From assembly GCF_003704095.1 (NCBI RefSeq), contig NW_020846508.1, positions 1 to 64,000 of the forward strand: DNA of 64,000 bases, read 5' to 3'. The stretch comes from Pocillopora damicornis. Lineage: Eukaryota. Every line of letters begins with the position of its first letter. The first letter of the stretch is position 1. The translations under genes were made by a program, and so were the position numbers. Shown here one piece after another: positions 2,531 to 18,700 of the stretch. The notes beneath the pieces were generated by a model. It did not search any database and had not been told where the DNA came from. It saw nothing but the letters and a program-made list of their open reading frames with translations.

Positions 2531-3693
2531 ATATGATAATAGGTTTTCATTCACATGCAAATAAAACTCAGTCTCATACGACTGGTTGAGCACCAGGCCT
2601 CGTTTTGAAAAAGAGGCAAAAGGTATTTCAGAATGACCGACCTGCAGGTTAGCGTACTGTAGCCTTACCCCCCTCCCTTCTTCCGTTACTCCTCTGGGGG
2701 AAGGGTACGGCTAAACGTGAGCTAACTAGAGGTGAATGGTGGTGGATGCTTACAGAGCTGCAAAGCGGTCAAGGATATATCAACCACTTTCACCCACAGT
2801 AGTGAATTATTAATTACTTCCGAACCCGCCAATCAGTGTGCACGAAAAGTACTATGTGTACTTATCTCGCTTGTTATTTATTAAATATCTATATTTATTA
2901 CCTAACTCATATTAAAAGCGATAATTTTACAATCGTAGCTTACTTTCGGCCCCACCTAGCTGAGTAATAAATAGATAGTAATCGGTAGTTATTTGTAAGG
3001 CAGAAAACACCCAAATATGATGCGCCAATCTTCCAACACAATTGGGTGTCCACATATCGCAAGGAGATATATCTAGGATATTAAAGAAGCTAGCTTTGAA
3101 TTGCCGAAAAAAACAATCATGAAGATTAGGAGTTTTTTCTGTTTGTAAGAAAACCCTTGCGAGGAAACACTTTTCTTTATTAAACAAAAATGGTCAAAAC
3201 TCTGAGACCAGATCAGAGAATTCCAGAATTGAACCCGCTATTTTGATGTAAATTTTCGTAGAAAAAGTCAATTCGATTTTTAGTGTACCTTTGTGATCGG
3301 CCTCCTCGTTAGTAGAGGGTGATCTAAACTTGATTATTTTCTGTATTTTCAGTCTGGACGCGGGAATGTTTCCACTGCCTTGATAAAGCGTCAAGATGCA
3401 AACCAGGCACTAACATCTCGACGATTCTAGAATGTACTGATCCTACTAATCGATGTTTTTTGAGGAAGGTTACAGGTGAAACAAGAGAAGGGGACATGAT
3501 AGAGCGAGGCTGTACCAATGAAGACGGCTGTGATATAATGATGAAAGCATGCGAAAACTCTGGTGATTGTAAAACTACATGCTGCCATCAAGACCTGTGC
3601 AACAGTGCCGTTACCAATGGCATTACGTCGAACACGTGCACATTCTTAGTTCTGTTGGTTATAATACTCATATTGAGGTGGGAGGTTTCTTGA
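776..3693 (+). CDS. Three-finger (Ly6/uPAR, LU-domain) protein 1, secreted and probably GPI-anchored, 130 aa, 2 exons
   Basis: Exon 1 776-827 encodes signal peptide MMVRFVVLCCFVTIPIS, then a phase-1 GTAGGT donor. Exon 2 3353-3693 follows ttttcag and reads in phase: VWTRECFHCLDKASRC...ERGCTNEDGCDIMMKACENSGDCKTTCCHQDLCNSA, then a hydrophobic tail FLVLLVIILIL. CxxC start and CC-x4-CN end are LU-fold hallmarks. Confidence 0.88.
2476..2640. mobile_element. Short palindromic MITE-like repeat in LU gene 1 intron
   Basis: Imperfect terminal inverted ends and a strong internal inverted pair (ttttcaaagcgagtcctggtgctca / tgagcaccaggcctcgttttgaaaa). Confidence 0.55.
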
Positions 3694-5769: not shown

Positions 5770-7709
5770 ATGGCAAATATGCTTGCATCGTTATGCGTCG
5801 TGCTTTTATCCATCAAAGGTAAGTAGGTTGTGCTGAAGTATAAACGACATAACTGCTGAAGATAAGTCGAGTTAAGTTTCAAGATTGTTATGGTGAAAGA
5901 ATTGTACGTTTGACGTAATTTCAAGATTGCTCAGACTTAAATTAATTTCCGCATTTCTATGGAGGCATTTTAGAACTGGTCGATGTAAAAACAGGTTTAA
6001 AATGACATGATCCCTTAAGATAAGATTTGCTAGACACTGACGCATATCAAACACTAGACGAATTCACGATTATTTCAAATTGTTGAACATCATTTTAGTC
6101 CTAGCTGTTTTCAATTAGTAAAGCAAACTATTTGGAATTGGAACTGATAAAAAAATTAGAATTTGAAAATAACGCATGAATAAAAATTCTGCCAATGTTT
6201 TTGTTATCCATTGTTTTGTTTCTTTTCTTTTGCAAAGAATCATTTTTCTCAATGATTTACTCATTTAAAGTCTTAAAACAGCCGCGGTTTAATTTGGGAT
6301 GAAGTAACTCTGTGTTCTATTTAAGGAACATTTTCCTGGCTACACTGAGCTTAACTTCATGGGTTCTCACCTTACATTTAGGTGAACCGAATTCCCAAGG
6401 CCATCTCCGCTTTTCGAAAAGAGGAGACCCTGGGAACGAGACTGTGTGTTTGGTCACTGTATAGCTCACTGTCTTAGTTTTTGCTTTTTTGCTTGTTACT
6501 CTGGGCTGAGGGGGTTGTAATGAGGATAACTCTAGTCCCAGGTTAATTGCATATAAATGCCTTATGACAGAATATGAAAGTACTCTCGATTAACCCTCAT
6601 CATGCTTAAAACAACTCGGCTCTGCATGTTTACTCAGCGGACGTTGGTTAGAGCTGAATGCCAACGTTCTTTGTTAAGGTGTGAGACAAAATCGTCGAGC
6701 AATCAAAAATGCGATACACATTAGGTTACCGCCCTGTTTACTCATTTTGATTCCATCGCAATTCACCCATCAGTAATTTTTTCCTTATCTTTCTCTAAAT
6801 CTTCATTTAAACTATTTCCCTTAGCGCCATTGATGTTTTATTGTAGAACTGTCATGTATCAGATGTTTTACATGCGATGAAGGCGGTGACTGTCGAAAAC
6901 AAATGGGAGAAGAGAAATGCCCTGTGGAACCACTACTGAAGGACAGGTGCATTGAGATAATGAATAATGAGAATGGACAGGTATTTGAGAGGAGTTACTT
7001 TGAATTAAAAGCAATGTTATCATTAATATCATATTAAGGAGTGTTTGTTTAATTCTAGAGTTTGTCTGCCAAGTCATAAGAATTCGAATCCATTTGGCAA
7101 TGCTTGATTCAAAGTAAATACAAAACATCATATGCTATCGTAACTATTTTTGATCAAATGAAGAATTACTGCCCTAGCGATAAAGGAAACAAAATCCTCC
7201 CTTCTCCCATTTTGCGCGTTAATCAGGAGTGAAAGCATGCGCATGATGCGAGATAAGAAATTATTCTGGCAGGTGAGCGGCAATCTATCAAATTTCTTTA
7301 AGTGCAGGTCATAAGCGAGGATCATTTATTTCCTTGTACACAATCCGCAAGTCAAAAAATTATTTATTTCATTCAATTGTGGTGCGCAAAATGACCAAAG
7401 TTTTGGTACATTGGATCTAGAACTCCATTTGAATATGATCTAATTGCCTGAAAGGAATATGATCGATGTCGCAATTCATTCCAGGTCGCCAAAGGATGCG
7501 CCAACATCAGAATGTGTCAGAAAGCAGAGAAAAATTGCAAAGAGGCCAAAGAAAGAAGGACTGGGGATTGTGACGTCACTTGTTGTACAGCTGACCTGTG
7601 TAATGCCGGCTCAAAAGGGTCCTCATCTCATTGGCTTCACGCGCTCTGCTTTCTCTTCTGTGTGTTGTTCTTAAACCTCCTCAAAACTGATATGATAAGC
7701 AACGAATAG
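5770..7709 (+). CDS. Three-finger (LU-domain) protein 2, probably GPI-anchored, 135 aa, 3 exons
   Basis: Exons 5770-5818 (MANMLASLCVVLLSIK, GTAAGT, phase 1), 6847-6980 (ELSCIRCFTCDEGGDC...KCP...DRCIEIMNNENGQ, GTATTT, phase 0) and 7485-7709 (VAKGCANIRMC...DCDVTCCTADLCNAGS plus hydrophobic tail). Phases are consistent. AATAAA near 7770. Confidence 0.87.
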
Positions 7710-8473
7710 AAAATCAACGATCAGAATAACTTATAAACAAGACAATGTTCTCCCTAGTATTAAGGAAACAATAAATTAAATAGTAAAAGAAGATGTACCC
7801 ATAAGAAGATTGCCCCATAATTGAAATTTATTAATGGCTGCAAATTTGCTAAAATTGCTTTTTAAGAAAAGCGCGTTCAGCAGTTTCTCGAACTTCACAA
7901 GCCTGGCACAATCATGTATATTCAATAACTAAGAAACATCTCGACTGCTTATGACATGTTACGGTCAACAACATTTGACCTTCAGTTATAGATAGGTTTC
8001 TTTCCAGAAGACATCCTTTGTTTTAACAGAAGAACTGACGTTTCCGCGCCAGGCATCCAAGCCATTGTAAGTCCCTGAAACTAGAAATGAGCTAAGTCTG
8101 ATCGTTTTTCTAGTTACGTATTCATAGATCTATAGCTTATGTCCACTCGAACACTTGTGATTTCTCCAGTTCGCTTAGGGATTCTTTCTCTGAGGCACCT
8201 TTGTCTTTCTCTTTGATTTGCAATAGGCAAAAGCTTTGTCTGGAGACTAACCATTTTCAAAACTGTAAAACCTTTGTCTGACCAAGAGTCATTTGTTATC
8301 GAATCTCTGACTTTTATTCGATGGCGCTCCCTTGCAAGTAAACGGAGAATTACCGACTACGAGAGACGATGACTTCCTTTAGTGAGCAAGCGCAATCTGT
8401 CTCGTGAAATTTACTCTCAAAAGTCGCACAAACAATATTTGTGCTCTTGTGAATAAATATAATCGACGTGCAC

Positions 8474-9295
8474 CTAGGAATGGCCATTTCCTATTTCAGA
8501 TTCTCTTAACAAGGGAAAGTTGATCAAGGACACAGCAGCAAATGATAGAACAATGATCCCTTGAAGATAGCCCCTCAGAATTTTGCCTGCGTTGCATAAG
8601 TTTCCATGACAACACTGATGTAAGCAGTTAAGATGGCCGTCGCAGTAGAGGTCAGGGTTGGCACAGTCACTGTCTGAAGAGCAATCCTTTGTAAACGTCT
8701 TTGTCACTATCTCAGATTTGTTCGAATTTTCTCCCCAGCTGTGAGTTTCTTCCTTAGTTATGGCATTGCAATGTTCAAACTTATAAGGACATATCCTCTT
8801 GATGATGTTTTTGTTACAATGTGCCCAAGATGTATTACTTCGACATGAAAAGCACGTTGACCCTGTAATTTAACAATACGAGGTTGGGTCTCTTTAAAAA
8901 AAAAAGAGGCTTTCAATTTTTACCTAACGAACTACGTATTTGTTTAAAGTTAGTACCTTTTACATGGCCATAAAGATGTGGTTGTACTGAAGGCTGAGTA
9001 GCTAGACATACCAAATAAACGCACACTTAGCTTTTATAGACATCGTTATTTATTCAGACACGTCACTTTAGAAACTCTTTTATCAAGAATGTACAACATC
9101 TACCTGTCACGAACCTCTTGTTGCTAGGATAGGAAGCAACTGCCATGGTGATCACTGTAACACACGAATTGAGGAGGCAAGTTTCTAAAGAAACTGTTGT
9201 GCTACGTCGGTGGGGGAGTGTAACAAGATAATTTGCTTTTATCAACTGAGTTGATGATGCAAATTGGCCACCATAAAGAGTTTCTAAACTGATGT

Positions 9296-9326
<31 letters not shown>

Positions 9327-11798
9327 GTGATAAAAATATGGCTTACACACATAAGTATGTGTTATGTTTATTGTGACCGATTGTAAACAATTTTCAATCA
9401 TTTTGATATTCTATTCTGTTATTTGTCAAAAGAAAAAGAAACCATCAGTATATTGCGAAGGTTAAACTGACCTGCGCAATAACCCCAGCCCGATCTGCTC
9501 AGATTCCTGTCAAATTCATTCTCTGTTGCACACCAGTATTCACCATTTGGATCATTATCAGTGGCTGCGCAGCTGATGTAGTCTTTACCAAGATATTTAA
9601 ACGGGAATTTGCAACATTCTCCATCTGTAGTCTTCACAAGACACTGCGATTTCCTCACTGCGTGAAGAGAAGACAAGTGAGGTCAATAAAACTTACTCCT
9701 CTGAGAATACCTTCTTGAGATCTAGGTCAACTGGATCGATGAGATTTAAAGGAAGCTTACATTTGCAGTAGCCCCAACTGGTAGTTTCGTTACTGCGATG
9801 TCTAACGTCTTCAGTGGCGCACCAAAAGCGGCCCTCGGCGTCCCCATTATTCGTGCATTTCTTGTATTTTACTCCTTTGTAGCGGAATGGAAATCGACAG
9901 CAGTGATAATCAACCGTTCTCTGGATACAGGCCGTATTTCTCTCTGTGACAACACTTTCTGAAACGAGTACAAAAGAATAAAATGAATATGCACCTTGGG
10001 AAAAAAGACAAAACTGCGCAGTCAGATGCACAGTATGCCCGGTAAAACTGCTCTCGGCCTAAGTCAGGGACGGTTTTGAGTGAAAGGAGATGTATAATAT
10101 TCAGCAGCGGAGGAAGGAAAGATGCCAATGTTGCGGAATTCACTCAAGATACAGTGAAGCAGTGCTTCCCTCCTTTATGAGGGACCTTAGGCAGTCAGGA
10201 CGGCAACGTCAAAAAAGACGTCGATTAAAAAATAAATTCGTATTTTAAGTTAGAATTTCGCGAATGGCTGAATGTCTTCACCATCTCTTACGGCGCCAAA
10301 CCTCAACTTTTACATAACGGATGTGAGCAGCGTTTGGTTCCCAAAGGAGACTTAAATAATTTGCCGTCGGGGTTTCCGCTCTAAGACCGCGCAAAATTCG
10401 GGGGGTTTCTTGATCCCATGTTGTTGTTTTGCACCGAGAGTAAGAATGTAGAAAGTTTTGAAAACTCACGTGCTGAGCTCAAGTTGTTCTGCCCATTAAT
10501 AGGTTTTTTGTTTTTGCCACGTCCTCGTTGCCGTCGCTGTCGTGGTTTGCTATTAAAAGACCCCTTTTATCCGCGATATGCTTAGATGTAGGCTTTTCCT
10601 TGATTCGAACGGCGTGATTGCAAGGCACATAGAGACATTTTGCCGAAACTTTTTGAAAAGAGTTCACTTTCGTTCTAGAGTCTATTTTCTTACCAGATTT
10701 TTACTGAACTATTAATGGAGCTAAACATGTTCTTGGCTTGTTTCGAGCACAACAGGGAGTTTTAATATATTCAAATATGACACAAGACATTTCACCGCAA
10801 TCTTTGCGTGACCATCGTAACCGACATGACCTATACATATCTACACGTGAGGATCAATGTATCGAAATTAAGACATAGCATAACCCACAAACTGACGAGT
10901 TTACTTGCAGTTCTGATATCACTTACTATCACATTATGCTGGAATATTGCGGCATCCGATATTTCTCAAACTGAAGCAATTGGAAATCGACTTTCCACTG
11001 AAGCCATCAAAATATATAAATAGACAAGAAAACGATTTTAACTAGCTTTCGCAAATATCGACACCTGCTGTTTTATGAATATTTAATCTGACGGGCAACC
11101 TACCGTTTTAAAGTTTAACTTTGATAAAAGGGATCTAATTCGCACCCCGTCGGGTCTTTCATTGAGATTAATCCCCTGAAACAAGAAAGCCCATCTTTTC
11201 CTGATTTCTTTCCGTACCACTTCATTGACCCAAAGTTAATAAGCAACTCCACAAACACATTCACATGGCTTATTCACTCTTGAGCAATTCCTAAATTTCT
11301 GAATTAAACATGACCATGCCATGGTGAATTAGTTTTTCCTGTTAAATTTGACGTCTTTTAGCTTTATTTCAGGTAAATCGATCAGCAAGACTCTCTCTAA
11401 ACTATGAATGAGTCAGGATATATTACAACCACGGTATCTCCATTTCAAACAGTTCCTACGTATGTTATAAACAAGCCGCATCTTTAGCATGCAAGCTCTT
11501 GGCAATTAACCCTTCGGCGTGTTATTCCCCCATCAGAAGTTAACTATATTTGTCCTTCTGTGTAAGAACTGGTCTCAATTCATCGAAGTTAAAAGTTTGA
11601 ACAACTTCCGTCGAAACTGCTTTCTACGAAACGTGTTGAAATAAATCGCAGCTAATGGATGACGAAAGAACTAAAAATTTGGCGTTCAGTCAAGAAAAAC
11701 ATATTTTTCTTCGATAGCTTGCAGAAGTATTCTTCCTTACCTGTGAAAACATAAGTCAGTACTGCGACAAACAAACGCGTTGCTCTCGCTTTCATCAT
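8474..11798 (-). CDS. Signal peptide-FN2-FN2-LU(three-finger)-GPI protein, 276 aa, 4 exons
   Basis: Exons 11798-11741 (MMKARATRLFVAVLTYVFT, GTAAGG), 9958-9761 (FN2: CCRFPFRYKGVKYKKCT...FWCATE...WGYC), 9657-9472 (FN2: CCKFPFKYLGKDYISC...YWCATE...WGYC) and 8862-8474 (LU: TCFSCRSNTSWAHC...CCHGNLCNAG plus hydrophobic tail). All three introns are GT-AG and phase 1, giving one continuous 831-nt frame. Confidence 0.88.
9178..9326. repeat. Dispersed repeat family (copies at ~46705-46925 and a fragment at 58952-58985)
   Basis: Shared gaaactgt(t/g)gtgct(a/g)cgt..gtgg..gagt.taacaaga.aattt...tatcaactgag.tgat...tg(a/t)cgttt.g..cgttagccctt. The 46.7-46.9 kb copy contains an internal inverted repeat. Confidence 0.65.
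10180..10565. mobile_element. MITE-like element in intron 1 of the FN2-FN2-LU gene
   Basis: Imperfect TIRs agggaccttaggcag..gacggcaacg / cgttgccgtc...tttgct..aagacccc; no ORF of note. Confidence 0.5.
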
Positions 11799-12724
11799 AA
11801 GCTATCTCCACGGTGAATCGTCAATGGCCATCTGGCAGTGTCGAGGTTATCGTGGCTCAAAGATGCATTTTTGTCGCCTTGAATGTGATTGGTCATTAAT
11901 GTTTCAACTCACTCAAGCATGCTAATCATCGACAGTCGATAGTTATCAATAACTCAGAACTCTTATAACTAAGCTGATGTTATTTCAGACCAACATGAAA
12001 TAGTTGATCACGGAATCAAAATTAGAAAGGTTATCACTGCGACACAGGCCATTAGATTAGTCATGGCTGAATGCCTTCAGCTTTGTTTAAAAAAACGTTT
12101 TGAGTGCATTTAGGGGTAATATTGCCCACGGCACATAATAATGACGATGAGCTTTACATTTATCCCTAAAAATTGTCTCCTTCAATTTCCTAATTCCTTT
12201 TTCATTTATTTTGAAATTCCAATCATGTTTTCTGAAGTTTAAAATTGACAGAACAGCCAAGGATTTATTTCCCTTTTTTAATAATTTTTAATTTAACAAT
12301 TCTGGTAGTGCCGCGATTGTACCCTCTACTCGAAGTCAAAACATGAAAGGAAAAGTTTACTCATTCTTAAAATAGTGAGAAACTTAACTTTTATTGATAC
12401 TCGGCTAAAAGAGTTAAAAGTGAAGAAAGCTCCAAAGGGATAAATCAAACAAACAAACAAACAGACAAGAAACAAGCGATTCCAAACAAATCAAAAACAA
12501 CGTAAAAAGAATCAAAAATCGCCTTTTGTATTCAGTCAGTGTTTTCTGGTCGGCGAAAGTTCATCAAGCGTTCTCATAATGATTTTACTGCTGCTTAATG
12601 AGGACATTATTTGACAAAGATAGATTCCTTGTAAGAGGGCGTTTAAAAATTAATTTGCACCAGCTAGCACAGGCCATTCAATTTTCCGAAACATTTGCCA
12701 TTTAAAAACAGCCGAACATCGAGG

Positions 12725-14165
12725 ATGTCACTACGAATATATCGAATTTTCCCTGGCGTGATAATGTTCCTCATAGCACTGTCACCATTATGTAAGTAAA
12801 CATAGAATTTTCCATCATTCAATCCTCATCTGAATGTTGGACAAGATCCCCTCAAACCGACCGATTAGGGATTGTTGCAAGTCCAAGTTTTGTTTAGCAT
12901 TTTTGTATTTTAGAAGCGGAACGGCTTGAACTTTCAAGCATTGCATTGAATCTCTGGTTTACAAACCAAATTAAAAGGAAAAAAAGATGGGGAGACGAAA
13001 GGCGTTGATGTCCGTACTGCATTCCATGTCAATTTTTGTTGGTTTCAAATGGTTTTATTTTACATGAAATCGTATAAACCCAGGGTCGAGTGTAAGGGGT
13101 TTTTCTAAAATCATCTCAAAGCATGACGAGTCACATAACTCACGTTATCAGGTTCTTATCAGGTTATTCACATGCAGCTCATGAATCTTTTTCTTAAAAT
13201 CTCGACAAGATCATTTTTAATCCTTCTTCACGTGTTAAGGACTCATTACTCGAAACAATTTTCTTTGGCCAAGTTAAAGTTTCGAGTATTTTCAAAATGG
13301 CCGAGGAAAGCATCATTTCCCCTTATCTTAAAGAAATTAAGCAATTTTATTCATTTTAAAGCTCAGATTGGGAGAGTACACTTGAAACAGAAATCACGCA
13401 CTGCACCGTATAACCTATTTATACATCAAAAACGGCATAAGTTTTGGACTTTTAAAAAAACAAGTGATTGTACTGGATTCCATCACGCCGGCCTACTTTT
13501 TCTCGTAACTAACATGAATGCAATTGCTATTGTGTACGGATTGAATTAAGATGTGCAGTACATGCACCGTTAGTGACTGACTTACTGACGGACTGATGGA
13601 CCGAGAGATTGACGGATCGAAGGACTGACGGATGGACTGACAGAGTGACTAACTGACTGACTGACTGACTGACCGACCGACTGATTGACTGAATGAGGAA
13701 GAACGGAGACTAAACGACCTGATTAATCGGCTGGTTGGCTAGTCGATGTGTTTATTAGTTTGCCATTTGTTATTTTTCGTCGGTTTTTTAGGCTCTTTGC
13801 ACTTGTGCTATTCTTGTCCAAAGACATCATCCATGGAAGAATGCAATGCCCAGATGACCCAGTATAACTGCTCCAACTTGGGTGCCTATCACAAAAAGTG
13901 TGCGCGCTTTTGTGATTGGAAAAATGGTGTCTATACACGAGAATGCGCAATGGAACACAAGTGCACGGTAATTCAGAGGGAATGTAAAGAAAGAGAGGAC
14001 ATGAAGAATAGCAAACAAAAAGAGCCTGAGTGCGAGTACAAGTGTTGTGATGGGGAGCTGTGCAATACTCACCCCTGTAGTGTGGGGCAGAGTCTTCGTC
14101 TACCACTGAGAAGCATTGTGGGACTCTCAACCGTCTATTTCATTTTTATAATCTGTTTCGATTAG
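12725..14165 (+). CDS. Three-finger (LU-domain) protein 4, probably GPI-anchored, 146 aa, 2 exons
   Basis: Exon 1 12725-12791 (MSLRIYRIFPGVIMFLIALSPL, GTAAGT, phase 1). Exon 2 13792-14165 after ttttttag: CSLHLCYSCPKTSSMEEC...CEYKCCDGELCN...IVGLSTVYFIFIICFD. Confidence 0.85.
13575..13725. repeat. Degenerate (GACT)n tetranucleotide microsatellite
   Basis: ctgactgactgactgactgaccgaccgactg, directly upstream of the acceptor of LU gene 4 exon 2. Confidence 0.85.
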
Positions 14166-15736
14166 TCTGAAAGAAGTAATAAAGTTATACTGAATCATTT
14201 TCCCGGTAAAAATTTATGATTCCCTTTACTGGAACAAAAGTGCTCGAATTCTATACACCGATCGTCAAATGAGGAAAATTTGAGACATTCATGATCAGAG
14301 CTCGAGGTTTTTCGCACGTCTTTAAATCGTGACACTTTATACATTCCTAACCTGAGAAAGGTTCTCCCTATGGGATGATCTGCACATCAAGCATAGTCCA
14401 TTTTCCTAAGCCCCTAGGAACAGAGATTTAAGCGGGGGGAGGGTTAGAGGGGGGAAATCACACCCAGTCTACAGAGCGTCCGTTCTCAAAAGTTAACTTC
14501 CAATGGAGACCCCCCCTGCAAATTCCCTCCATTAACCGAAGTCATACCCAAGCGGGAAGCCATAATGGGAAAGATAAATAGAACTGATTAAAGAGCAGCA
14601 GGAAAGGAATGGCAAAGTTGTTTCAGTCAGCACAGTGACAGCTAATTTTTGTGGTTATTCGCTCCAAGACCCCTAATTCACTGACAAACACTGCAGTATT
14701 GCTCTCAGAGGTGCAAGAGAAGTAATAATAAAATGACAGACAAAAAGCTGTTTTATAAAACTATTAATTGCTGTTTATTGAATACTTGAGATTACACACA
14801 GCCATCTACACCTAAACATACCATACATTCTTCCTGGAGGAATTCATTGAGAATACATACATGTAATTTTGTTCGCACTCAAGTTAAGGGCAAAAAAAAA
14901 ATTCCTTAGGGGAGACACACATCCCAAATCCCAAGAAAAAACTCCTAATTTCCACACTTTTCAGTCACCTCCGTTAATTCACCAGAACTTTTACTGCACT
15001 TTCTTTATCAGGCAAAACAATTTTACCTGCATGAACAGATACACACACTAAAAGAAATAAATGCAACCTATGATCTGTGAACAAAATTCAAGTGCATAGT
15101 TAATCAAAGCAAATACCATAAAGATCGGAAGTGTCAAGGAAACAGGTGCGCATTACTCAGAAGACATATGAATTGCATTTAGGGGAAGGTTGCTAAACAT
15201 CAGCTATATCATGTTTAAGAGTTGAAGCCACGGTTTTTAATTTCCTTACTCACTTGATTTGGGTTCCTGTTTAATTCTTCACAACAGTTGAATCTTATAT
15301 TTTGTATCAACTACACCTACTAAAACTAACAAGACCACTGATTTCACAAAAAATGTTTCACTACCTTGTCTTTTTGCATGTTTAAGAAAAGAGATTCCCT
15401 AGCTCTGTATCCAAATTATAGGATAAAAATAAAGAACACAGATAGGGATGTAGAATTTGCAGTAAAACATGAACATTTTCAAGTGGTTTTACTTTGCACA
15501 TCTCTAATATATTGAGTGTACAAATTTTCAAGGCTACAATTGCTCAAAGGAGCTATTTTTTGCAATTTTCTGTCCTAGCAAGAGAACATCAACAAAAAGA
15601 TAAACATAATGTTTTAAAATATAGAAACAAAACTCCTTCTGTAGACACAGGCCAGCCAGTCTTAATTGTCTTAATGAAGAAAGATGAAAAAAATGGAGTG
15701 TCCACTCAAAAATAAAAAATGACATGATAGAAAACC

Positions 15737-18700
15737 CTAGCCTTCTGCAACCAATCGGGCTTTGTTCCAGGCATTTCTGATGATCTGTTCCACTTGTGCT
15801 GCCTCTGGGTGACGCAGCACATGAGGATGGAATGCACCTGGGTTGGGAGGCTCACCCTCTTTCTGCGCGGCACTGGAGTCATGGTCATCAACGTACATCT
15901 CCAGCTCGGACGCAGTACAGCAGCACAAGCATTTGCGAGTTTCCTTCAACTCCAGATCCTTGAAGAATCGATAGTCCATGTACTCTGTTCGAACTGAAAG
16001 CACAGTTTACATGAAAATCACATTTCCTGTCTAAGTAAACTTGAAACCATTCAATAATATAACAATTTCACTAAAATTTTTCATTGTCCAAACCAAATAA
16101 AAAAGTATGAGCAATGCATGTTGATAGATCTTTAATGACCACATATAGCTACTTTCTGCTATCATGTAAATAAACATTGTTGCTAATTAAATAATAGTTA
16201 GAGATGTCTCAAAATTCTTCTTACAAGTGTAAGACTGTCAAGCACTCATCTATTGAGAATCACAAAGCTCAATTACACAAGGTGGGGAGGTGGATACTTA
16301 CGATGATAAAACTGTCTAGCACCCAAGGGATAATTAATAGTGATCAGGAGAATTGCTTCTCAGATTTTGGGAAAGAAAAGTCTAACCCTTTACACTCTAA
16401 CAGCAAAATGCATATTCTCCATACTGTTCTCTATACATATCCCAAGGTGCTGACAAGGAGAATTTGTCTAATTAACAATCAAGAACTTCTTAAGTTGGTG
16501 ATCATTTCCTTTGTTCTCCCTACCTATATATTTGATTCAGTGGTGTTCTTGTAAGGAGAAATTAGTTGAAAGAACACAAGGCACTCAGCCAATTAATTCA
16601 ACATGAGGAGCTTTTGTTACTTAGGGTCAGAAGAAAAGCATTTTCTCAAAAAGAACTCTGAAAAAACATATATGTGAAATGAATATATATTCTTACAAAA
16701 AAAAAATTGTTTTCTAACCTTCCATCCACAGTCCACAGGGTGGTTCGCGCTTGTAGAATACACCTTGTCCTGTGACACGCCAGAAAGTCTTGGCCAAACA
16801 ACATGGACAGCAATACGCCACACAACATTCTCCACAGTCTTCTTTGTACCGAATTCCAGGAGCTGGTGTAACTCCAGACCACTTGGAAGCACTGAGTTCG
16901 GCTTCCTTCTTTTTCCTCTTCAATAAACCAATCAGATCCATCAGATAAAGTCTGTCTCCCAGAACAGTGATGCCAAGCTCATGCAGATGACCCTGGAGAG
17001 AGTAAAAAATTAATTACAATTCCATAAGTTTTTAAGGTCCAGCTATGAGAGATTTACAGTCAATTAAAAATGAAAAATGTAGATTTACTTCACTTCACAG
17101 TGGCACATGTGGGAGAAATGCAGTCATATTTTCACACCAAAAAGAATTTAACAAGCCAGCTTTTGCCCAGGCTAGAAAATCAACACACCCTCAAAAAACC
17201 CCTCTGAGCAAAGACAGTAACCAAACATAGACAAAAGCCACCTATGAAGCAAGATTGTGGAATTAAATACAGACTGCCACCAAGGAAGGGTAATGCTTGC
17301 ACCACTGCACCAACAATGCACTCCACTACACTTCTTGAATGGTATTACAAACATGTATTACCTATTCTGACATTCAATTTCATTCAACTCTGAAGTTGCT
17401 CACAATTTGACCATAAATAAATAGATGGAATAAATCAAAGCATCAGCTTGTACTACTTTCCCATTGAGAGAATAACTCTATTCTTAACCCTTTCACTTTA
17501 GGAGTGACCAAGACATAACTTCTCCTTACAGTATCAATACAACATCAAGCAGCCAAGTGATGAGAATAACAAAATTTTAATTAGTAACTAGGGAATTATC
17601 TTTAGATTCTACATCAAATTCTCAAAGAAAACTCTATAAGAAATGTTTGGCAGACAGTAAAGATAATTTCAGTGAAAGGGTTAAGAACTAATCAAACAAT
17701 AACTTATTTAAAATTTTGCCAAATTTTGATCATCGAAACCCATATTTGTCCCTGGCATGTCCCAAATATCATTCAAACCCACCTCTGTCAAAAGCATCAG
17801 ACATTTTCCAGTGATCTTGTTCACTGAGAACTGCTCTGCCATATAACCCAATCCAGCACGTTCAAGAAAATTCCTGTTCACATCCTCTACAGACCAAGCT
17901 GTTGAAAAAATTGACAAGCAACACCAAATTAGTGTTGATCGTCATATTATAAGCTATTGATTTCAATTTCATTTCAGTTTGTCTTCTATAATACATGCAA
18001 GTACACCTGCAATGGGAGAGAAAGCACAAAATATTTAGTAAAAAAAACTGAGGAAAAACTGATAACTAGGAAAACAATTTTGAAGATAACAGAGGAGTTT
18101 CAAATTCATGATTAAATTATGAATCAAAGAACTGAAGTTGCAGAATTGCCACTAGTAAGTGTACCTTCTATCATTGTGGTGCAAAAATATAAAACAGCCT
18201 GGACATGAACTTGGAACAAGTAAATGGCACCAAAGCTTTTAAGAAACATTTAATTACTGAATTAATGAGCAATATAGGACAAGTTTGGACATATCATTGT
18301 AAATAGCTAATTTCTTATATTTTTCTGTGATTCATTTATTTATTTTCTGTATTTTGATGTTGATGCTGAAGATCCCTCTTCAGGGATACTCAGTAAAAGT
18401 GTTCATATGTATTTATCCCATTAAAGATCTCCTAATGCAGGCTTCCGTAGCCAATTCCAATATAATTGTTGGAAAGAAAGCATGAACAGCATCTAATCAA
18501 TTTATCCTGAAAAATGTTATATGAAAGAAAATTTAATTTCTAAAGCAGAAACATACAATACATAATTATCCAAAATATTTCACAATTGTGCAACAGATCT
18601 CATCATTCCTTGATGTGCCCCTTCAAGAATGTCACGAGTGGCACAAGTGATCGCATCTGAGTAAAAAGTACTTTAAAAATTCAATCCTCGTTCAAGAGGG

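What the first reader, a model, noticed from the sequence alone, without database searches (positions are those of the whole stretch)
8474..11798. Exon-shuffled FN2-FN2-LU-GPI fusion protein
Seen: two complete fibronectin type II modules on symmetric phase 1-1 exons (198 and 186 nt) sit between the signal exon and the LU exon, in the intron position that the three neighbouring LU genes have empty. Known: FN2 binds collagen/gelatin (MMP2/9, Endo180) or choline phospholipids. Tandem FN2-FN2 is the whole architecture of mammalian binder-of-sperm proteins, and GPI-anchored LU proteins (Bouncer, SPACA4) mediate sperm-egg recognition. In vertebrates the FN2 protein uPARAP/Endo180 partners the LU protein uPAR. 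I know of no described protein joining these two domains. Inference: a lineage-specific surface receptor coupling collagen or lipid binding to a three-finger recognition module.
Basis: partly seen in the sequence, partly recalled or inferred. Interest (0 to 1): 0.85.

Follow-up and report, generated by a model that had tools for sequence, protein, structure and literature searches.

The report
Coral FN2-FN2-Ly6 surface protein gene
This is a real, expressed stony-coral gene for a membrane-tethered protein that joins two collagen-binding-type fibronectin type II modules to a Ly6/uPAR three-finger domain, a combination that is conserved across stony corals, sits in databases only as "fibronectin-like", and was described in no paper I found.

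Summary
On the minus strand there are four exons. They are a signal exon (11798-11741), two phase 1-1 FN2 exons (9958-9761 and 9657-9472) and an LU-plus-hydrophobic-tail exon (8862-8474). RNA contigs from four independent studies carry all three GT-AG junctions, and two single contigs span all four exons.

The genome is Pocillopora damicornis. The gene is not a species-specific novelty:
- FN2-FN2-LU orthologues occur in Acropora, Porites and Orbicella.
- A second subfamily, FN2-LU, occurs in Pocillopora (contig C3405 of this genome), Montipora, Porites, Oculina and Desmophyllum.
- Both major coral clades are covered, and no named hit lies outside Scleractinia.

All are annotated by their FN2 part only ("fibronectin-like", "epididymal sperm-binding protein 1-like", "uncharacterized"). 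A 2026 survey of invertebrate Ly6/uPAR architectures does not list the combination.

dN/dS of 0.19-0.33 indicates purifying selection on all three domains. The FN2 modules are closest to the MMP-2/MMP-9/fibronectin gelatin-binding modules.

My best reading, which is inferred, is a GPI-type anchored surface protein that binds collagen or matrix. The function, the GPI anchor and any gamete role are untested. I class it as a new variant of known kinds, of moderate interest.

This scan had not found the architecture before on other DNA.

The parts
11741..11989 (-). Exon 1: 5' UTR (RNA contigs reach about 11989) plus the signal-peptide coding part 11798-11741 (58 nt, ends in phase 1)
   Evidence: Translation shows a basic n-region followed by a hydrophobic core. 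Donor GT at 11740. RNA contigs X13 record 9 (11741-11989) and X6 record 21 (11741-11958), and joint 9958|11741 in 4 runs.
9761..9958 (-). Exon 2: FN2 module a (198 nt, phase 1-1), 6-Cys form (C-x8-CC...), one N-x-T site
   Evidence: Pfam fn2 E=1.3e-12, 47.9 bits. Best solved relatives are the MMP-2/MMP-9 FN2 modules. Joints on both sides appear in 4 RNA runs. dN/dS is 0.19 against the mRNA of a closely related coral of unknown species.
9472..9657 (-). Exon 3: FN2 module b (186 nt, phase 1-1), 6-Cys form, canonical aromatic positions kept, one N-x-S site
   Evidence: Pfam fn2 E=5.8e-11, 42.6 bits. MMP-9/MMP-2/fibronectin are the top solved hits. RNA joints. dN/dS 0.33.
8474..8862 (-). Exon 4 coding part: a 12-Cys Ly6/uPAR (LU) domain starting 4 residues after the last FN2 Cys. 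It is followed by small residues (N-A-G), a spacer, a hydrophobic stretch of about 18 residues and 10 hydrophilic residues. Stop TAG at 8476-8474.
   Evidence: Translation. UPAR_LY6 at 15.9 bits is sub-threshold, but the family profile hits uPAR, LYPD6, LYPD3, PSCA, SLURP1 and CD59. In the structure search, 20 of the top 21 hits are three-finger/LU proteins, though Z is at most 4.7. Hydropathy of the tail. dN/dS 0.24.
7810..8473 (-). 3' UTR. AATAAA signals on the minus strand begin at 8318 and 7832. Contigs end near 7810-7908. One contig runs on to 7482 and may merge with the convergent neighbour's 3' end.
   Evidence: RNA contig pieces (table 8). Poly(A) signal scan.

Best explanation
Shown: this is an intact, spliced, expressed Pocillopora damicornis gene. 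Exon by exon, it encodes signal peptide, FN2, FN2, LU (three-finger) domain and a C-terminal hydrophobic anchor signal. It belongs to a protein family conserved across stony corals. The family has two subfamilies, FN2x2-LU (this gene) and FN2x1-LU (paralogue on contig C3405). All three domains are under purifying selection. Inferred origin: class 1-1 FN2 exons were inserted into the phase-1 intron that coral LU genes carry between the signal exon and the LU exon. This happened before crown Scleractinia diversified, probably once, and the FN2 exon later duplicated in the x2 branch. Inferred mechanism: the protein is exported and tethered to the outer leaflet by a GPI-type anchor (less likely a short transmembrane tail). 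The LU domain sits next to the membrane. The two FN2 modules, joined to it and to each other without flexible linkers, project outward. They use the conserved aromatic pocket of gelatinase/fibronectin-type FN2 modules to bind collagen or another matrix ligand. The protein would then act as a cell-surface matrix adhesion or capture receptor, with the LU domain as a stalk and possible second recognition or co-receptor surface.
For: Gene model and expression: searches show three canonical junctions in 4 runs from 4 studies, with single contigs across all exons. Genome identity: the paralogue product P0191 is RMX38014.1/XP_027053601.1 of P. damicornis, on a contig of 340434 nt, the length of C3405. 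Family: the exhaustive HMMER search with the LU exon returned FN2-bearing proteins P0002, P0006, P0008 and P0023. P0006 carries fn2 x2 plus UPAR_LY6 at 31 bits. Named members are from Acropora millepora, A. muricata, A. palmata, A. cervicornis, Porites (4 spp.), Orbicella faveolata, Montipora foliosa, Oculina patagonica, Desmophyllum pertusum and Pocillopora (3 spp.). Within this genome, at least 73 FN2 and at least 66 LU matches share a contig only at these two loci. Purifying selection: dN/dS 0.19, 0.33 and 0.24. Single origin favoured: in the best tree the x2 and x1 LU domains lie on one side of a branch against 22 LU-only genes (support 79/77), and the junction motif and intron phase are the same in both. 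FN2 type: top solved relatives are the MMP-2, MMP-9 and fibronectin gelatin-binding modules. Surface location: signal peptide, four N-glycosylation sequons and a short C-terminal hydrophobic stretch after small residues. In most orthologues, and in all x1 members, the protein ends at or just after that stretch.
Against: No binding, localisation or cell-type data exist for any member, and literature searches found none. FN2a of the Pocillopora protein has lost one consensus aromatic position, so only FN2b keeps the full pocket pattern. FN2 modules also bind choline phospholipids in BSP proteins, and sequence similarity alone does not exclude that. The tail has 10 hydrophilic residues after the hydrophobic stretch, and the Orbicella orthologue has a 22-residue basic tail, which is atypical for GPI signals. 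AlphaFold models were of low confidence (pLDDT 60 and 64), so the domain arrangement is not established. The single-origin tree branch is weakly supported, and the FN2 tree does not place the x1 FN2 with FN2b.
Confidence: 0.55

Rival explanations
1. Same protein, different ligand. The tandem FN2 pair works like the binder-of-sperm/ELSPBP1 proteins and binds phosphorylcholine lipids on another cell's membrane (gamete, symbiont or microbe). The LU domain acts as the recognition module, as in Bouncer/SPACA4. The protein would then be a cell-cell recognition molecule rather than a matrix receptor.
For: Tandem FN2 is the BSP/ELSPBP1 architecture. ELSPBP1-like proteins are the strongest non-coral hits of the family profile, and NCBI names the Orbicella orthologue 'epididymal sperm-binding protein 1-like'. 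PDC-109 is a significant hit for FN2a, although a weak one (2e-5).
Against: Those hits cover only the FN2 part (about 39% of the query) and reflect generic FN2 similarity. Gelatinase and fibronectin modules score better than PDC-109, and FN2b does not hit PDC-109 at 1e-3. The transcript is found in routine adult-colony RNA libraries from many studies, which does not suggest gamete restriction. No expression data by stage or cell type were available.
Confidence: 0.15
2. The anchor is shed or never attached. The protein would then be a secreted matrix or skeletal-organic-matrix component, or a soluble modulator like SLURPs or three-finger toxins, rather than a surface receptor.
For: GPI proteins are often released. 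The tail is atypical, with hydrophilic residues after the hydrophobic stretch. Cnidarians have secreted LU mosaics such as Kunitz+LU (PMC13719153).
Against: Every family member keeps a C-terminal hydrophobic segment preceded by small residues. A purely secreted protein would not need to conserve this. None of the papers my searches returned mentions such a protein, and coral skeletal proteome lists were not searched directly.
Confidence: 0.15
3. The four-exon model is an artefact: a chimeric assembly, or FN2 exons and the LU exon belonging to separate mRNAs.
For: Logan contigs are assemblies of short reads, and the tool warns that a contig across two genes shows no single transcript.
Against: The three junctions are canonical and in frame, and they are present in four independent studies. 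The same joined architecture appears in transcript-derived or annotated proteins of many other coral species and in the paralogue. Purifying selection acts on each part.
Confidence: 0.02

Closest known systems
Gelatinase (MMP-2/MMP-9) and fibronectin collagen-binding FN2 modules
   Same: They are the best solved sequence relatives of both FN2 exons. The four canonical Cys are present in both modules. The consensus aromatic positions (FPF, Y, WC, [FY]D, WG[FY]C) are all kept in FN2b, while FN2a lacks the [FY]D aromatic. The modules are tandem with short linkers, and the exons are class 1-1.
   Different: There is no catalytic, hemopexin or FN1 context. The coral modules carry an extra Cys pair (C-x8-CC), which is general to this coral's FN2 repertoire. 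They are fused to an LU domain and a membrane anchor.
Binder-of-sperm proteins / ELSPBP1 (tandem FN2 only)
   Same: Small secreted-pathway proteins built from tandem FN2 modules. They are the top non-coral hits of the family profile.
   Different: They have no LU domain and no membrane anchor. Similarity is limited to the FN2 region, and choline-lipid binding was not tested here.
GPI-anchored single-LU proteins (LYPD6, Lynx1, PSCA, CD59, SPACA4/Bouncer) and uPAR
   Same: The LU cysteine frame with a terminal CC-x4-CN, a phase-1 intron after the signal exon, and a C-terminal hydrophobic anchor signal. Profile hits to uPAR and LYPD6. Structure-search hits are nearly all three-finger proteins.
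   Different: The coral form has 12 Cys. N-terminal FN2 modules are fused directly, with 4 residues between the flanking Cys. No ligand is known.
uPAR with uPARAP/Endo180 (LU protein and FN2 protein acting together in vertebrates)
   Same: It brings a collagen-binding FN2 module and an LU receptor together at one cell surface.
   Different: In vertebrates these are two separate proteins in trans, and Endo180 is a large C-type lectin receptor. Here the domains are in one small polypeptide. The resemblance is conceptual only and no homology of the system was shown.
Non-standard LU mosaics in invertebrates (Kunitz+LU in cnidarians; C1q+LU, FreD+LU, 7TM+LU elsewhere), PMC13719153
   Same: LU domains combined with other extracellular modules in single phyla.
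   Different: FN2+LU is not among the architectures listed there. A likely reason is that most members' LU domains fall below Pfam thresholds.

Membership tests
Fibronectin type II domain (Pfam PF00040) | Score above the curated Pfam gathering threshold over the full 42-position model | tested here: met
   47.9 and 42.6 bits against 22.2, with model positions 1-42 matched in both exons. The own-genome scan also lists both.
Fibronectin type II domain (Pfam PF00040) | Four conserved Cys and the conserved aromatic core or pocket positions | tested here: met
   Alignments to the MMP-2/MMP-9 modules show all four Cys and FPF, Y, WC and WG[YF]C in both modules. The [FY]-D position is kept in FN2b but not in FN2a. 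Disulfide connectivity itself cannot be tested here.
Fibronectin type II domain (Pfam PF00040) | Collagen/gelatin (or choline-lipid) binding | not testable with these tools
   This needs a binding assay. The only evidence here is sequence proximity to gelatin-binding modules.
Ly6/uPAR (LU, three-finger) domain (Pfam PF00021 and clan) | Score above the Pfam gathering threshold | tested here: not met
   The window's LU exon scores 15.9 bits against 24.8. Orthologue P0006 scores 31.0 bits and the C3405 paralogue exon 28.2 bits, so both pass.
Ly6/uPAR (LU, three-finger) domain (Pfam PF00021 and clan) | Significant profile similarity to experimentally solved LU proteins | tested here: met
   The profile of alignment A5, whose first row is the window exon, gives uPAR 1e-8, LYPD6 6e-8, LYPD6B 6e-8, LYPD3 2.8e-5, PSCA 1e-4 and SLURP1 5e-4.
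Ly6/uPAR (LU, three-finger) domain (Pfam PF00021 and clan) | Cysteine frame with N-terminal C-x2-C and C-terminal CC-x4-CN | tested here: met
   This is directly visible in the translation. The frame is conserved in all family members and in about 20 other LU genes of the genome.
Ly6/uPAR (LU, three-finger) domain (Pfam PF00021 and clan) | Three-finger fold | tested here: inconclusive
   The AF2 model has pLDDT 63.8 and finger 3 is unresolved. Foldseek found nothing significant. In the VIA wide search, 20 of the top 21 hits are LU or three-finger proteins, but Z is only 2.5-4.7.
GPI-anchored protein | C-terminal signal: small omega residues, hydrophilic spacer, and a terminal hydrophobic stretch too short for a transmembrane helix | tested here: inconclusive
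   N-A-G after the last Cys, a spacer of about 9 residues and a hydrophobic stretch of about 18 residues, followed by 10 hydrophilic residues. Most orthologues and all x1 members end at or near the hydrophobic stretch, while Orbicella has a 22-residue basic tail. No GPI predictor or experiment was available.
Binder-of-sperm / ELSPBP1 family | Architecture consisting only of tandem FN2 modules, secreted | tested here: not met
   An LU domain and a hydrophobic anchor follow the FN2 pair. Similarity to ELSPBP1 covers only about 39% of the query.

The most novel reading that the evidence does not exclude
FN2-LU proteins are a stony-coral innovation. They would be a GPI-anchored receptor family that couples epithelial (for example calicoblastic or desmocyte) cell surfaces to collagenous mesoglea or the skeletal organic matrix. 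That would make them part of the tool-kit that arose with the scleractinian body plan. It would also be a natural single-chain counterpart of the vertebrate uPAR-uPARAP collagen-handling pair.
Probability: 0.12. Interest if true: 0.75.

Novelty: new variant of a known kind. Interest (0 to 1): 0.5.

Why it matters
The finding adds an undescribed extracellular domain combination (FN2 fused directly to an LU domain on a membrane anchor) to the Ly6/uPAR and FN2 repertoires. It shows the combination is an old, selectively maintained family of stony corals rather than an annotation accident. It explains why the family has been overlooked: the LU domains fall below Pfam thresholds, so every database name rests on the FN2 part. 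It is a clean example of class 1-1 exon shuffling into a conserved phase-1 intron in a non-bilaterian. It also gives coral biologists a small, tractable candidate for cell-matrix or cell-skeleton adhesion that simple binding and localisation experiments can test.

Tried and rejected
1. Full-length fold of the closest orthologue (P0002, 26-row alignment). Mean pLDDT was 60.1 and the LU part fell below 50. It was not used for any claim about domain packing.
2. Fold of the window's LU exon. pLDDT was 63.8. Foldseek against PDB gave no hit at E<=0.001. The VIA wide search gave only low Z values.
3. ESM Atlas look-up of P0006. Only LU-only clusters came back, at scores 0.82-0.84, which is below the useful range, and no FN2+LU cluster appeared.
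4. Literature searches found nothing relevant beyond the 2026 LU survey. I searched for FN2+Ly6+coral, ELSPBP1+coral, FN2+scleractinia (those hits were 'type III' word-start artefacts), FN2+calicoblast, six protein and gene accessions and two SRA ids.
5. LU-only proteins P0014, P0018, P0059 and P0060 first looked like exon-skipped isoforms. I rejected that reading because their N-termini look like translated intron in front of the LU exon, i.e. ORF calls on genomic contigs.
6. The C-x8-CC extra cysteines might have been a signature of this family. I rejected this because most FN2 modules of the genome have them.
7. I rejected the idea that the gene arose by FN2 insertion into one of the neighbouring LU genes. 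The neighbours' LU domains lie on very long, separate branches.
All searches used single exons by reference or database proteins returned by the tools.
9. I could not determine the organisms of the Logan-derived orthologues P0002, P0006, P0045 and P0046.
Full report
**1. Is it there?**

The gene lies on the minus strand. Its exons are:
- Exon 1 carries an ATG at 11798 and ends at 11741, with GT following. The 58 coding nt end in phase 1 and encode a typical signal peptide: basic residues followed by a hydrophobic core.
- Exon 2 (9958-9761, 198 nt) and exon 3 (9657-9472, 186 nt) are both phase 1-1. Each translates into a complete FN2 module.
- Exon 4 (8862 to the TAG at 8476-8474) encodes a 12-cysteine LU-type domain. 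It begins C-x2-C and ends CC-x4-CN, and a hydrophobic tail follows.

Pfam scores the two middle exons as fn2 at 47.9 and 42.6 bits, against a cut-off of 22.2. The last exon reaches only 15.9 bits for UPAR_LY6, against a cut-off of 24.8.

**2. Is it one mRNA?**

Fifteen RNA runs hold about the exonic share of the stretch. I laid contigs of four RNA runs from four studies on 7300-12800. All four carry the joints 8861|9471, 9657|9761 and 9958|11741 with CT..AC ends, which is GT..AG on the coding strand.

One contig of 1588 nt (X13) and one of 1076 nt (X6) cover all four exons. A third contig (X1, 1806 nt) covers exons 2-4 and reaches 41 nt into exon 1. No exon-skipping joint is listed in the table of joints (two less-supported joints are not shown there), though contigs can drop rare isoforms.

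The transcript runs from about 11989 to about 7810, with an AATAAA at 7832. Every search used single exons by reference or database proteins returned by the tools.

**3. Whose genome?**

G000 has 234.35 Mb in 4393 contigs, and the RNA holders are coral libraries. The product of the paralogue on contig C3405 (340434 nt) is in the protein collection as RMX38014.1/XP_027053601.1 of Pocillopora damicornis. That record sits on a contig of exactly that length.

**4. A family, not a one-off**

I ran an exhaustive HMMER search of 1.84 billion representatives with the LU exon. It returned proteins in which the LU match is C-terminal and FN2 modules lie in front:
- P0002: 259 aa, 72% identity, fn2 x2.
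- P0006: 271 aa, fn2 x2 plus UPAR_LY6 at 31 bits, above the cut-off.
- P0008: Acropora cervicornis KAK2563807.1.
- P0023: 186 aa, fn2 x1 plus LU.

Word-based searches and cluster look-ups added named members.

| Subfamily | Named members | Names given by the sources |
|---|---|---|
| FN2x2-LU | Acropora millepora (XP_044173037.1), A. muricata, A. palmata | "fibronectin-like" |
| FN2x2-LU | Porites lobata, P. lutea, P. evermanni, P. harrisoni | "unnamed protein product", "uncharacterized protein", "the peptidase M10A" |
| FN2x2-LU | Orbicella faveolata (XP_020616091.1) | "epididymal sperm-binding protein 1-like" |
| FN2x1-LU | Montipora foliosa, Porites spp., Oculina patagonica, Desmophyllum pertusum, Pocillopora verrucosa, P. 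meandrina, P. damicornis | "uncharacterized", "HGF activator-like", "cation-independent mannose-6-phosphate receptor" |

Every name reflects only the FN2 part. The precomputed Pfam columns show PF00021 in just two clusters.

All named species are Scleractinia, from both the complex and the robust clades. That clade assignment rests on my knowledge of coral systematics. The profile search found only FN2-only proteins outside corals, namely ELSPBP1, MMP-9 fragments and an Actinia CUB/peptidase protein. That search has limited sensitivity, so absence elsewhere is not proven.

**5. The paralogue in this genome**

On C3405 (locus L001, minus strand) there are three exons:
- a signal exon at 5468-5417, ending in phase 1;
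- one FN2 exon at 5103-4921 (183 nt, phase 1-1; fn2 56.7 bits);
- an LU exon at 4390-4071 (UPAR_LY6 28.2 bits, above the cut-off). Its product ends right at the hydrophobic tail.

The spliced product is matched by P0058, a near-identical 186-aa protein seen on many short Logan contigs, and by P0191, P. damicornis's own annotated protein.

Genome-wide there are at least 73 FN2 matches and at least 66 LU matches. The two sets share a contig only at C3143 (this window) and C3405. P. damicornis therefore has exactly two detectable FN2-LU genes among large FN2 and LU repertoires.

**6. Domain identities**

FN2: both exons find the gelatin-binding FN2 modules of MMP-2 and MMP-9 as the best solved relatives. 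Whole-chain E-values are about 1e-20, and single modules reach 1e-6 to 1e-8. Fibronectin, SEL1L, factor XII and CI-MPR follow. PDC-109 is a weak hit for FN2a only.

The consensus aromatic positions are all present in FN2b. FN2a of the Pocillopora protein lacks the [FY]-D aromatic. The extra cysteine pair (C-x8-CC) is general to this coral's FN2 modules and is not a mark of this family.

LU: a profile built from LU-only rows, headed by the window exon, hits several solved LU proteins:
- uPAR at 1e-8
- LYPD6 and LYPD6B at 6e-8
- LYPD3, PSCA, SLURP1, GPIHBP1 and CD59 at weaker values

AlphaFold models were poor, with pLDDT 60 and 64. Foldseek found nothing. An all-against-representatives structural search listed almost only three-finger proteins among its top 21, including CD177, TEX101, Lynx1, LYPD6B, GPIHBP1, C4.4A, toxins, uPAR and CD59. 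However, Z was at most 4.7. The fold is consistent with LU but not independently proven. Membership rests on the sequence profile, the cysteine frame and the orthologues' Pfam scores.

**7. Selection and origin**

I compared the window's exons with the mRNA contig of P0002, a close relative of unknown species. dN/dS is 0.19 for FN2a, 0.33 for FN2b and 0.24 for LU plus tail, with dS about 0.3-0.4. All three domains are maintained by selection.

The family alignment shows an invariant tight junction. The last FN2 Cys and the first LU Cys are 4 residues apart, and the phase-1 intron sits in the Gly codon between them. This is identical in both subfamilies.

In an LU tree with 22 LU-only genes of this genome, the x2 and x1 LU domains fall on one side of a branch. 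Support is 79/77, with 76% of bootstrap trees. A single fusion is favoured but not shown. The neighbours' LU domains sit on long branches elsewhere, so the gene did not arise recently from its cluster neighbours.

In the FN2 tree, FN2a and FN2b each form a clade and join each other at 86/81, with a long-branch caution. The x1 FN2 is unresolved among other FN2 modules.

Two neighbours have sequence-predicted signal exons ending in phase 1 (776-827 and 5770-5818). Their LU exons start in the matching phase. The FN2 exons therefore do sit in the intron that ordinary coral LU genes have between signal and LU. This is classic class 1-1 exon shuffling, but an ancient event.

**8. Anchor**

After the terminal CN come small residues (A-G), a spacer of about 9 residues and a hydrophobic stretch of about 18 residues (maximum Kyte-Doolittle mean 2.3 over 15 residues). 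Ten hydrophilic residues follow.

Most orthologues and all x1 members end at or just after a 12-15-residue hydrophobic stretch. That fits a GPI signal better than a transmembrane helix. The Orbicella protein, however, continues with a basic 22-residue tail. GPI-type anchoring is the likelier reading but remains untested.

**9. Function**

Nothing is published on any member that I could find. The most complete recent survey of invertebrate LU architectures covers 13 cnidarian genomes and 563 three-finger proteins. For Cnidaria it lists only LU, receptor kinases and a Kunitz+LU protein (PMC13719153).

From the anatomy, I commit to a membrane-tethered matrix-binding protein. The tandem gelatinase-type FN2 modules would form the distal collagen or matrix-binding head. 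The LU domain would be the membrane-proximal module, with a possible second binding surface.

The rivals are BSP-like lipid binding or cell-cell recognition, and a shed or secreted matrix component. The presence of the transcript in routine adult-colony libraries from several studies argues mildly against a gamete-restricted role.

**10. Verdict**

It is wrong about recency and lineage-specificity, and its functional parallels are unsupported.

The finding is a new variant of known kinds: a novel, conserved, unnamed domain combination. The proteins already sit in public databases under FN2-based names. Interest is moderate, because domain mosaics are common in cnidarians. On the other hand, this one is old, constrained, apparently coral-restricted and easy to test.

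Noticed in passing
window 9140-9323 (intron 3); also 10060-10243 and 10428-10611 (intron 1): Short intronic segments have enormous summed RNA contig depth (about 6,600-15,800 at 9140-9323) in all four runs. Many partly fitting contigs, loose ends and opposite-strand joints are present. They look like high-copy, transcribed interspersed repeats (MITE/SINE-like) rather than part of this gene.
   Followed up: no
window 12268-12635: RNA contig coverage lies upstream of the gene's 5' end (depth 87-183 in X1, 53-140 in X6) and is not joined to exon 1 in any listed contig. It could be an unannotated exon, another transcript or a repeat. A possible signal exon for the downstream LU gene lies at 12725-12791, but no RNA was seen there.
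   Followed up: partly
window 7452-7832: Convergent 3' ends nearly abut. The plus-strand LU neighbour stops at 7706 with AATAAA at 7770, and this gene's minus-strand AATAAA begins at 7832. One RNA contig (X1, 7482-8861) runs through both, either as read-through or as an unstranded merge.
   Followed up: partly
G000 contig C2706:19454-64354 (minus strand): At least 27 FN2 modules, most scoring 55-72 bits, are spaced every 1-3 kb along 45 kb. This is a giant poly-FN2 gene or a tandem array of FN2 genes.
   Followed up: no
G000, genome-wide; window 3334-3690, 6834-7706, 13743-14162: The genome has at least 66 LU exons. Most sampled copies use a 12-Cys frame with an S-W-x-x-C motif after the first C-x2-C. 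The window's other LU genes are very divergent from each other and from the FN2-LU gene (long branches).
   Followed up: partly
L004-L023 (sampled FN2 loci of G000): Nineteen of 21 sampled FN2 modules carry the doubled CC in front of the canonical first Cys, and most of them also have a further Cys 8-10 residues upstream. This suggests a 6-Cys FN2 variant with an extra N-terminal disulfide as the norm in this coral.
   Followed up: partly
P0002 (locus L025) compared with window 8600-8760: The closest orthologue mRNA lacks 16 residues of the second LU finger that the window gene has. Its AlphaFold LU region was disordered. This could be a real lineage difference, or a deletion or alternative form.
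   Followed up: no
P0049/P0157 (Orbicella faveolata orthologue): The C-terminal hydrophobic stretch is followed by a 22-residue basic tail (R-R-K-R-K). This hints that some orthologues may be transmembrane rather than GPI-anchored.
   Followed up: no
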